A stretch of DNA of 64,000 nt, from assembly GCA_950097015.1 (NCBI GenBank), contig CATNEN010000014.1:558001-622000 (forward strand), written 5' to 3'. Positions within the stretch are counted from its first letter, which is position 1. Every line of letters starts with the position of its first letter. The position numbers and the translations under genes are program-made. The notes below the pieces were generated by a model that made no database searches, was not told where the DNA came from, and worked only from the letters and a program-made list of their open reading frames with translations. Origin of the DNA: Macrostomum hystrix. Lineage: Eukaryota; Animalia; Platyhelminthes. Shown piece by piece: positions 7,801 to 8,112 of the stretch.

Positions 7801-8112
7801 CTTATCTTCCCCTCACAGCGAATTTTCCCCAAATGCGTTTCCAGATGCCGCACAGCAATATCCGTGGGAGCCGTCAGCCACCCGGCTGTCATTCCGGAGG
7901 AGCCATCAGACAAGCAGCGGAAATATTTGAAGCAGCAGCAGCAGCAGCAGGCCTCAGTTTCCTCAAAGAAGCGTAAGCAGCAGCAGAAGGAGCAGAAGAA
8001 GCTGGAGAAGCAGCGCCAGAAGCAGCTGCAACGGCAGCGGCCGCGACCCAACAACCTGAGCGGCTCGGAGAGTACAGGGTCCGGCAAGTCAAGCAAGTGT
8101 TCCGTCATGTGA
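4848..8112 (+). CDS. RPS6KB: p70 ribosomal protein S6 kinase. Predicted exons 4848-4925, 5698-6232, 6317-6753, 7423-7533, 7624-7739, 7845-8112.
   Basis: Kinase motifs [35 protein letters not shown] and [12 protein letters not shown]. Turn motif PVESP and hydrophobic motif FEGFTFV are S6K-specific AGC features. All introns are GT-AG and keep frame. The first and last exons are less certain than the kinase core. Confidence 0.93.

What the first reader, a model, noticed from the sequence alone, without database searches (positions are those of the whole stretch)
7845..8112. S6 kinase ending in a CaaX prenylation box that mimics the Rheb C-terminus
Seen: the last exon gives ...[40 protein letters not shown]...[12 protein letters not shown]-stop (TGA 8110-12). 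Established: CaaX ending in M is a farnesylation signal, and a polybasic stretch upstream is the usual second membrane signal. Human Rheb, the mTORC1 activator upstream of S6K, ends in GKSSCSVM (from memory). Canonical S6Ks are not prenylated. Inference: a membrane-anchored S6K placed on the same membranes as Rheb-mTORC1 would be a rewired TOR pathway.
Basis: partly seen in the sequence, partly recalled or inferred. Interest (0 to 1): 0.78.

Follow-up and report, generated by a model that had tools for sequence, protein, structure and literature searches.

The report
Flatworm S6 kinase with lipid-anchor tail
This flatworm gene encodes a growth-control kinase (an S6 kinase) whose expressed mRNA ends in a farnesyl lipid-anchor signal, and the same ending occurs in all 24 related flatworm sequences examined, including schistosomes and tapeworms, which suggests an undescribed membrane-tethered branch of TOR signalling.

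Summary
Intron-less transcript contigs from four runs of one study use the 7739^7845 junction. They define a six-exon gene (4788-8541) encoding a 514-residue kinase that ends in KCSVM and a stop codon at 8110-8112.

The kinase is of the S6K type. Its best match among solved structures is human S6K1, and it sits inside the S6K clade of a tree rooted on RSK/MSK. The activation-loop Thr, the turn-motif Ser-Pro and the hydrophobic-motif Thr are all present. This copy has no TOS motif.

The ending is conserved. All 24 flatworm S6K-like sequences of this type (Macrostomum, 14 trematodes, 6 cestodes) end in [GSA]-K-C-x-[VILT]-M. None of 386 other S6K/RSK-like proteins fetched does. Against the Macrostomum lignano orthologue, dS is about 1 and the last exon has omega about 0.3.

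The Rheb mimicry is only partly supported. CSVM is identical to the end of human Rheb, but the M. lignano orthologue ends AKCGLM, and K-C-a-a-M also matches DiRas1/2. A 2017 survey found no Rheb or TSC genes in parasitic flatworms that carry this same S6K ending.

My best reading is a farnesylated, membrane-tethered S6K paralogue. I found no paper describing it. Lipidation and localisation are untested.

The parts
4788..4925 (+). Exon 1: 5' UTR and start codon (ATG 4848-4850). Encodes the first 26 residues. No TOS motif.
   Evidence: Transcript contigs begin at 4783-4792 and splice 4925^5698. The ORF and an in-frame upstream stop were found. A TOS pattern search found nothing.
5698..6232 (+). 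Exon 2: N-lobe and catalytic loop of the kinase domain (YRDLKPEN).
   Evidence: Pfam Pkinase, E = 7e-35. Best solved-structure match is human S6K1 at 209.8 bits, against 185 bits for RSK2.
6317..6753 (+). Exon 3: DFG motif, activation loop (Thr227 at 6382-6384) and C-lobe.
   Evidence: Pfam Pkinase, E = 1.4e-27. Best match S6K1 at 202 bits. Motifs located.
7423..7533 (+). Exon 4: AGC C-terminal extension with the turn motif Ser371-Pro (7483-7488).
   Evidence: Pfam Pkinase_C, E = 1.5e-6. Motif located.
7624..7739 (+). Exon 5: hydrophobic motif FEGFT(390)FV (Thr at 7630-7632) and a basic/Ser run, ARRRSSSSS.
   Evidence: Junctions 7533^7624 and 7739^7845 appear in all four runs. Motif located.
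7845..8112 (+). Coding part of the last exon: a low-complexity Q/K/R-rich tail, then [11 protein letters not shown] and the stop codon.
   Evidence: The tail is homologous to that of M. lignano Mlig026841g1, with omega about 0.30.
7966..8049 (+). K/R-rich stretch KKRK...RQRPRP (residues 467-494). It could be a second electrostatic membrane signal or a nuclear localisation signal.
   Evidence: The last 70 residues hold 19 K/R, 5 D/E and 16 Q, and include a KKRK match. Its function is inferred.
8095..8109 (+). K-C-S-V-M: the invariant Lys followed by the CaaX farnesylation box (Cys511).
   Evidence: In 24 of 24 flatworm sequences the Lys, Cys and Met are invariant, a2 is V/I/L/T and a1 varies. 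CSVM is the validated farnesylation box of human Rheb (PMC7255682).
8113..8541 (+). 3' UTR, with AATAAA at 8488-8493. Transcript contigs end at 8522-8541.

Best explanation
The gene (4788-8541, + strand) encodes a catalytically competent S6K-family AGC kinase from a Macrostomum-like flatworm. Its disordered C-terminal tail ends in a farnesylation signal, K-CSVM.

Inferred mechanism:
1. Farnesyltransferase lipidates Cys511.
2. The -SVM tripeptide is removed and the new C-terminus is methylated.
3. The kinase is then weakly tethered to the cytoplasmic face of endomembranes.
4. In the Macrostomum copies, the K/R-rich stretch upstream adds electrostatic or nuclear-envelope targeting.

The retained activation-loop Thr, turn-motif Ser-Pro and hydrophobic-motif Thr imply that the kinase is still switched on by PDK1-type and TOR-type phosphorylation. 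This copy lacks the N-terminal TOS docking motif, so membrane anchoring may replace raptor docking as the way it meets its upstream kinase. That last step is speculation.

The lipid-anchor ending marks flatworm S6K paralogues that coexist with a canonical, non-CaaX S6K.
For: - The spliced mRNA carries this exact ORF in four runs of one study.
- It belongs to the S6K family. Human S6K1 is the best solved match for both halves of the kinase domain. All flatworm copies form one clade (support 100/98) inside S6K in a tree rooted on RSK/MSK.
- The catalytic and regulatory motifs are intact.
- 24 of 24 flatworm sequences of this type end [GSA]-K-C-x-[VILT]-M. They come from the window, two M. lignano paralogues, 14 trematodes, 6 cestodes and one metatranscriptome contig.
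- The variation pattern fits CaaX rules. Cys and Met are fixed, a2 is aliphatic and a1 is free (S, C, N, G or R).
- Several parasite versions rest on cDNA or transcript contigs.
- Compared with M. lignano Mlig026841g1, the exon structure is identical, dS is about 1.0, omega is 0.056 in the kinase core, 0.30 in the last exon and 0.20 in the last 35 codons. The tail is therefore under constraint.

From the literature:
- CSVM is the farnesylated box of human Rheb (PMC7255682).
- A mammalian KRas CaaX tag localises a reporter to membranes in M. lignano embryos (PMC12633465).
- Schistosoma mansoni Ras is farnesylated (PMC6548881).
- Prenylated AGC kinases already exist: GRK1 and GRK7 (PMC3307776).
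Against: - No direct evidence of lipidation or localisation exists for any of these proteins.
- All the RNA evidence comes from one study, as assembled contigs, which can hide minor isoforms.
- In the kinase-domain tree the Macrostomum CaaX copies group with Macrostomum non-CaaX copies rather than with the parasite CaaX clade. Monophyly of all CaaX proteins is rejected (AU p = 0.0036). The ending was therefore either gained twice, lost repeatedly, or the kinase domains were homogenised within the lineage.
- The K/R-rich stretch is not next to the Cys and is missing in parasites, so a strong second membrane signal is not a conserved feature.
- The M. lignano paralogue P0198 has both a TOS motif and a CaaX box. 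This weakens the idea that the anchor replaces TOS.
Confidence: 0.72

Rival explanations
1. Rheb-tail mimicry. The tail copies or was captured from the Rheb C-terminus, so that S6K sits on the same membranes as Rheb-mTORC1. Alternatively, it compensates for the loss of Rheb in flatworms.
For: - The window ends GKSSKCSVM and human Rheb ends GKSSCSVM.
- Cestodes end GKD[SG]KCSVM.
- The last 15 residues of Rheb have been used to retarget mTORC1-pathway proteins (PMC7255682).
- RHEB, TSC1 and TSC2 are reported missing from parasitic flatworm genomes (PMC5745459). That makes a link between the two changes conceivable.
Against: - The M. lignano orthologue ends GRPAKCGLM and its paralogue ends KQKDKCRLM. 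Trematodes end N[AS]KC[SCN][IVT]M.
- Only K-C-a-a-M is conserved, and it matches DiRas1/2 equally well.
- Where Rheb is reported absent there is nothing to co-localise with.
Confidence: 0.15
2. Nuclear-envelope or nuclear targeting. In the Macrostomum copies, a classical basic nuclear localisation signal (KKRK) together with the CaaX box acts as it does in lamins, placing the kinase at the inner nuclear membrane rather than on cytoplasmic endomembranes.
For: - A KKRK match at residues 467-470 sits in a K/R/Q-rich stretch upstream of the CaaX box.
- From my own knowledge: lamins combine a nuclear localisation signal with a CaaX-Met box, and S6K2 and p85 S6K1 carry nuclear localisation signals.
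Against: - The basic stretch is absent from the trematode and cestode tails, so this cannot be the conserved function.
- Nothing was tested.
Confidence: 0.12
3. The ending is a peptide ligand rather than a lipidation site. It could be, for example, a PDZ-type C-terminal ligand, or a redox or metal-binding Cys.
For: - S-V-M fits a class I PDZ ligand.
- From my own knowledge: the C-terminus of mammalian S6K1 binds the neurabin PDZ domain.
Against: The position that a class I PDZ ligand requires to be Ser or Thr varies here (S, C, N, G, R). Cys at -4, an aliphatic residue at -2 and Met at the end are fixed. That is the CaaX pattern, not the PDZ pattern.
Confidence: 0.06
4. The ending is a neutral accident of a fast-evolving low-complexity tail and has no function.
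For: - The tail is low complexity and diverges quickly. blastn cannot align the last exon between the window and M. lignano.
- First readers of this scan flagged many CaaX-like endings in this genome.
Against: - The ending is retained in 24 of 24 sequences across Macrostomorpha, Trematoda and Cestoda.
- None of 386 other family members ends C-x-x-M.
- Omega is 0.2-0.3 at dS of about 1.2.
Confidence: 0.03

Closest known systems
p70 ribosomal S6 kinases (human RPS6KB1/RPS6KB2, Drosophila S6k)
   Same: A single AGC kinase domain that is most similar to S6K1. The activation-loop Thr, turn-motif Ser-Pro and hydrophobic motif F-x-G-F-T-F-V are present. The protein falls inside the S6K clade.
   Different: It ends in a conserved CaaX-Met box instead of the ...RPPHLRMN-type tail. 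This copy has no TOS motif and no Ser/Thr-Pro autoinhibitory cluster. It coexists with a canonical-tailed S6K paralogue in flatworms.
Rheb small GTPase C-terminus (human ...GAASQGKSSCSVM)
   Same: The CaaX tetrapeptide CSVM is identical, and a G-K-S-S stretch lies just upstream. Both belong to the TOR pathway.
   Different: One is a kinase and the other a GTPase. The similarity beyond K-C-a-a-M is not kept in orthologues. Rheb is reported absent from the parasitic flatworms that carry the same S6K ending.
GRK1 and GRK7 (prenylated AGC kinases)
   Same: They are AGC-family kinases whose membrane targeting comes from a short C-terminal CaaX box that is conserved within the subfamily (PMC3307776).
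   Different: They are a different subfamily that phosphorylates receptors. Their boxes end in Ser (farnesyl) or Leu (geranylgeranyl). They are not TOR-pathway kinases.
LKB1/STK11 (farnesylated kinase upstream of AMPK and TOR)
   Same: It is a Ser/Thr kinase in nutrient signalling with a conserved, farnesylated C-terminal CaaX Cys that affects pathway output (PMC3898322, abstract seen).
   Different: It is not an AGC kinase, it lies upstream of the pathway rather than downstream, and it has a different CaaX box.
K-Ras4B and DiRas1/2 tails (polybasic stretch plus K-C-a-a-M)
   Same: A Lys sits directly before the Cys, the last residue is Met, and basic residues lie upstream. The KRas tag works in M. 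lignano embryos.
   Different: In the window protein the basic run lies 16 to 44 residues from the Cys and is interrupted by Q and E. Parasite orthologues have no polybasic run.

Membership tests
p70 S6 kinase (RPS6KB) subfamily of AGC kinases | A single AGC kinase domain closer to S6K than to RSK, MSK, SGK or Akt | tested here: met
   Against solved structures, S6K1 scores 209.8 and 202.2 bits; RSK2 scores 185 and 177 bits. In the tree the protein lies inside S6K, with the RSK/MSK outgroup separated at 99/94 support.
p70 S6 kinase (RPS6KB) subfamily of AGC kinases | Activation-loop Thr, turn-motif Ser-Pro and hydrophobic motif F-x-x-F-T-[FY] | tested here: met
   TNT(227)FCGT, S(371)PED and FEGFT(390)FV are all present, together with YRDLKPEN and DFG.
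p70 S6 kinase (RPS6KB) subfamily of AGC kinases | N-terminal TOS motif (F-[DE]-[IL]-[DE]-[LM]) for raptor docking | tested here: not met
   No match in the window protein or in its M. lignano orthologue. The motif is present in paralogues P0198 (FDIEL) and P0211 (FELEL) and in the nemertean protein (FDLEL).
p70 S6 kinase (RPS6KB) subfamily of AGC kinases | C-terminal autoinhibitory region with Ser/Thr-Pro sites and a canonical tail ending ...RPPHLRMN | tested here: not met
   The tail has ARRRSSSSS but no Ser/Thr-Pro cluster. The canonical tail is replaced by a Q/K-rich stretch and the CaaX box.
p70 S6 kinase (RPS6KB) subfamily of AGC kinases | Phosphorylates ribosomal protein S6 and depends on TORC1 | not testable with these tools
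   This needs kinase assays and rapamycin or RNAi experiments.
CaaX-prenylated proteins (farnesyltransferase substrates) | Cys exactly four residues from the C-terminus of the expressed protein | tested here: met
   The junction and ORF are confirmed by transcript contigs. Cys511 lies in a 514-residue protein.
CaaX-prenylated proteins (farnesyltransferase substrates) | Aliphatic a2 and an X residue that specifies farnesylation (M, S, Q, A or C) | tested here: met
   The box is CSVM. Across 24 sequences a2 is V, I, L or T and X is always M. CSVM itself is the farnesylated box of human Rheb.
CaaX-prenylated proteins (farnesyltransferase substrates) | The Cys is conserved in orthologues | tested here: met
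   24 of 24 sequences keep it, spanning Macrostomorpha, Trematoda and Cestoda. Tail omega is 0.2-0.3.
CaaX-prenylated proteins (farnesyltransferase substrates) | Covalent isoprenoid on the Cys, and membrane association that depends on it | not testable with these tools
   Only indirect support exists. A KRas CaaX tag works in M. lignano (PMC12633465), and S. mansoni Ras is farnesylated (PMC6548881).
Rheb C-terminal targeting signal (mimic) | Rheb-like hypervariable sequence upstream of the box, conserved among orthologues | tested here: not met
   GKSS occurs only in the window copy, and the similar GKD[SG] only in cestodes. M. lignano has GRPA and trematodes have [ST]N[AS].
Rheb C-terminal targeting signal (mimic) | Co-localisation with Rheb in the same organism | not testable with these tools
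The literature reports RHEB absent in neodermatan flatworms.

The most novel reading that the evidence does not exclude
Spiralian S6K genes may carry an old alternative last exon that encodes a basic stretch plus a CaaX box. Traces of it are the predicted isoforms of the snail Gigantopelta (...SRKKKGSCIMT) and the nemertean Tubulanus (...KSKSKHKASCVPN).

In flatworms this isoform would have become separate, permanently farnesylated S6K genes. In a phylum that has lost Rheb and TSC, at least in its parasitic members, anchoring the substrate rather than the activator to membranes would be what couples S6K to TOR. This would be a differently wired TORC1 output, and possibly a relevant target of farnesyltransferase inhibitors in schistosomes and tapeworms.
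Probability: 0.15. Interest if true: 0.85.

Novelty: new variant of a known kind. Interest (0 to 1): 0.66.

Why it matters
S6K is the textbook soluble output kinase of TORC1. I found no report of a lipid-anchored S6K in three literature searches.

Here the anchor signal is conserved in all 24 flatworm sequences of this type, including the human parasites Schistosoma and Taenia. These proteins sit in databases under automatic names such as 'ribosomal protein S6 kinase beta-2'.

If the kinase is farnesylated, three things follow:
- It gives a concrete and testable example of how TOR signalling is organised on membranes in a phylum reported to lack Rheb and TSC in its parasitic members.
- It adds a growth-control kinase to the candidate substrates through which farnesyltransferase inhibitors act on schistosomes.
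- It can be tested directly in Macrostomum, where mRNA injection, transgenesis and membrane-tag assays already exist.

Tried and rejected
- A word search with the tail exon alone (88 residues) found nothing. Its length window excludes full-length relatives, so this blank says nothing.
- Pfam hits to the tail (Myb_Cef, MAML2_TAD) fall below their cut-offs and reflect the Q/K-rich composition. I rejected them.
- I tested whether all CaaX proteins form one clade. That was rejected (AU p = 0.0036). Placing all Macrostomum copies with the parasite CaaX clade was not rejected (p = 0.25). A single origin is therefore neither shown nor excluded.
- I looked in the window for a second S6K copy or a hidden canonical-tail exon with tblastn and found none.
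- blastn could not align introns or the last exon between the window and the M. lignano locus. I therefore used a protein-guided codon alignment.
- Other C-at-minus-4 endings (P0095, P0162, P0328) look like broken models or chance, and I did not count them.
- I could not search for flatworm Rheb, TSC or farnesyltransferase genes.

Full report
**Observation**

Codons 8095-8109 read K-C-S-V-M and are followed by TGA at 8110-8112.

Four public runs from one study each hold one intron-less contig of 1.8-2.0 kb. Each contig matches the window without a single mismatch. Each joins 4925^5698, 6232^6317, 6753^7423, 7533^7624 and 7739^7845, all at GT..AG.

The runs are not labelled as RNA, but the removal of five introns shows that they hold cDNA. 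The contigs start at 4783-4792 and end at 8522-8541, about 30-50 bases after an AATAAA at 8488-8493.

The first ATG after an in-frame stop is at 4848, and the ORF has 514 residues. No contig reads through to TAG 7741-7743 or uses the acceptor at 7819. Assembled contigs can drop rare isoforms, and the four runs count as one study.

**What the protein is**

Pfam finds a protein kinase domain in exons 2 and 3 and the AGC C-terminal extension in exon 4. Human S6K1 is the best solved-structure match for both halves of the kinase domain (209.8 and 202.2 bits). The N-terminal kinase of RSK2 comes next (185 and 177 bits), and Akt, SGK and PKC score much lower.

These motifs are present:
- the catalytic loop YRDLKPEN and the DFG motif
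- the activation-loop Thr227
- the turn-motif Ser371-Pro
- the hydrophobic motif FEGFT(390)FV

No TOS motif is present in this copy or in its closest orthologue. Paralogues and a nemertean S6K do have one: FDIEL, FELEL and FDLEL.

**Organism**

This agrees with my results. The kinase core is 89.9% identical to Macrostomum lignano Mlig026841g1.

The two genes have the same internal exon lengths (535, 437, 111 and 116 bases). Their exons are only 82-83% identical in DNA, and their introns cannot be aligned. The window therefore comes from a Macrostomum relative or from an old duplicate copy.

**Conservation of the ending**

An exhaustive profile search with exon 2 returned 150 cluster representatives. 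Two real S6K-like proteins among them end in a CaaX-Met box, one from Schistosoma japonicum and one from Mesocestoides corti.

A word search with an alignment then recovered many more flatworm sequences. In total, 24 of 24 sequences of this type end [GSA]-K-C-x-[VILT]-M:

| Group | Sequences |
|---|---|
| Macrostomum | the window protein and two M. lignano paralogues |
| Trematodes (14) | five Schistosoma species, two Trichobilharzia, Heterobilharzia, Dicrocoelium, Opisthorchis, Calicophoron, Fasciolopsis, a fasciolid-like sequence, Paragonimus |
| Cestodes (6) | Mesocestoides, Taenia, a taeniid-like transcript, Hymenolepis, Rodentolepis, Hydatigera |
| Unassigned | one metatranscriptome contig |

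- The Lys before the Cys, the Cys and the final Met never vary.
- The a2 position is always V, I, L or T. The a1 position varies freely (S, C, N, G, R).
- This is the pattern expected of a farnesyltransferase signal. It is not what a PDZ ligand would give.
- Several parasite sequences come from cDNA clones or transcript contigs rather than from gene models alone.

Against the M. lignano orthologue, synonymous divergence is about 1.0. Omega is 0.056 in the kinase core, 0.30 in the last exon and 0.20 in the last 35 codons. The tail evolves fast but is under constraint.

**Paralogy**

Flatworms also have an S6K with a canonical, proline-rich, non-CaaX tail. Examples are M. lignano Mlig018773, a second Mesocestoides protein and a Schistosoma spindalis protein.

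In a maximum-likelihood tree of 43 kinase cores rooted on RSK/MSK:
- All flatworm copies form one clade inside S6K (support 100/98).
- The parasite CaaX proteins plus the metatranscriptome sequence form one subclade (100/100).
- The Macrostomum copies, both CaaX and non-CaaX, cluster together. They sit next to the parasite non-CaaX group with moderate support (96/77).

Monophyly of all CaaX proteins is rejected (AU p = 0.0036). Joining all Macrostomum copies to the parasite CaaX clade is not rejected (p = 0.25).

The tails point the other way:
- The non-CaaX copies share an F-[VL]-F-E-[ED] acidic motif.
- The CaaX copies share an I-P-[EG]-[EA] element and the invariant K-C-x-x-M.

A single origin with later loss or homogenisation, two independent gains, and an ancestral alternative exon all remain possible.

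**The Rheb comparison**

Human Rheb ends ...GAASQGKSSCSVM (PMC8242357), and its CSVM is farnesylated (PMC7255682). The window's GKSSKCSVM is therefore a real resemblance, and cestodes end GKD[SG]KCSVM.

The resemblance does not hold up as a conserved feature. The closest orthologue ends GRPAKCGLM, its paralogue ends KQKDKCRLM and trematodes end N[AS]KC[SCN][IVT]M. The conserved K-C-a-a-M equally matches DiRas1 and DiRas2 in the same published table.

A 2017 survey reports no RHEB, TSC1 or TSC2 in the Hymenolepis, Echinococcus, Opisthorchis and Schistosoma genomes, with a caveat about annotation quality (PMC5745459). Co-localisation with Rheb therefore cannot be the conserved purpose of the ending. 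A link to the loss of Rheb is an open and attractive idea.

**Mechanism**

What is shown: the expressed ORF, the family assignment, the intact regulatory sites, the conserved CaaX-Met ending and the constraint on the tail.

What rests on established knowledge: CaaX boxes ending in Met direct farnesylation, removal of the last three residues and carboxyl methylation. Supporting literature:
- A mammalian KRas CaaX tag localises a reporter to membranes in M. lignano embryos (PMC12633465).
- S. mansoni Ras is farnesylated (PMC6548881).
- GRK1 and GRK7 show that AGC kinases can use a CaaX box for membrane targeting (PMC3307776).

What is speculation:
- which membrane the protein goes to
- whether the K/R-rich stretch (7966-8049, containing KKRK) adds plasma-membrane affinity or acts as a nuclear signal, as in lamins
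- whether anchoring compensates for the missing TOS motif

One CaaX paralogue keeps its TOS motif, which argues against a simple replacement.

**Beyond flatworms**

A search with the nemertean S6K, followed by a look inside ten spiralian clusters, showed that the canonical last exon (...RSPAIATKN...NRPPHLRMN) is often replaced in predicted isoforms. Two of these alternative tails are a basic run followed by C-x-x-x:
- Gigantopelta X2: ...SRKKKGSCIMT
- Tubulanus X2: ...KSKSKHKASCVPN

The Haliotis, Patella and Liolophura alternatives are not of this kind. This is a lead, not a result. The isoforms are computational predictions, and the two boxes are atypical.

**Novelty and verdict**

Three literature searches found no description of a prenylated S6K. 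The parasite sequences are public but carry only automatic names.

I class this as a new variant of a known kind: an S6K paralogue with a conserved farnesylation signal, found in every flatworm group sampled. The specific Rheb-mimicry and co-localisation inference is not supported.

Noticed in passing
Proteins P0219/P0287/P0288 (Tubulanus polymorphus) and P0326/P0415/P0416 (Gigantopelta aegis): Predicted alternative S6K isoforms replace the canonical tail (...NRPPHLRMT/LQLL) with a basic run plus C-x-x-x: ...KSKSKHKASCVPN in the nemertean and ...SRKKKGSCIMT in the snail. This may be a trace of an old membrane-targeted S6K isoform outside flatworms, or it may be chance.
   Followed up: partly
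Literature (PMC5745459), not in the window: RHEB, TSC1 and TSC2 are reported absent from the Hymenolepis, Echinococcus, Opisthorchis and Schistosoma genomes. These are the same groups whose S6K paralogue carries the CaaX-Met ending. Whether free-living Macrostomum has Rheb is unknown to me.
   Followed up: no
window 716-1915 (-): A 400-residue open reading frame matches the carboxylesterase family (Pfam COesterase, E = 8e-77). It is probably one exon of a neighbouring esterase gene.
   Followed up: partly
window 52364-53953 (+) and 57998-59866 (-): Two long uninterrupted reading frames (530 and 623 residues) both match the amiloride-sensitive sodium channel (DEG/ENaC) family. They lie on opposite strands about 4 kb apart.
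   Followed up: partly
window 9300-62750, e.g. 12908-15351, 24541-26625, 30810-32469, 36697-38302, 60285-61789: The window is unusually rich in long minisatellite arrays, with periods of 14-80 bases and up to 77 copies. Several create long spurious reading frames and strong GC skew.
   Followed up: no
window 6035-6567 (loose ends): Other transcript contigs of the same runs match short conserved kinase stretches and then diverge. One continues with a sequence that translates to QFLSADAQSL, which is RSK-like. These are paralogous AGC kinase mRNAs, not isoforms of this gene.
   Followed up: no
Protein P0001 (M. lignano A0A1I8F118): The top hit of the exhaustive search is a broken M. lignano gene model. 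Its frame is lost in the activation loop and it has no C-terminus, but its N-terminus carries a TOS motif (FDFEL). This illustrates how the older annotation hides the tail.
   Followed up: no
Earlier notes of this scan on the same genome: First-stage readers flagged CaaX-like endings on many unrelated proteins of this genome, including a Roco GTPase, an atlastin-like protein, a RING E3 and a cGLR. Either prenylation is widely recruited in this lineage or readers over-call Cys at -4. Each case needs a conservation test like the one done here.
   Followed up: no
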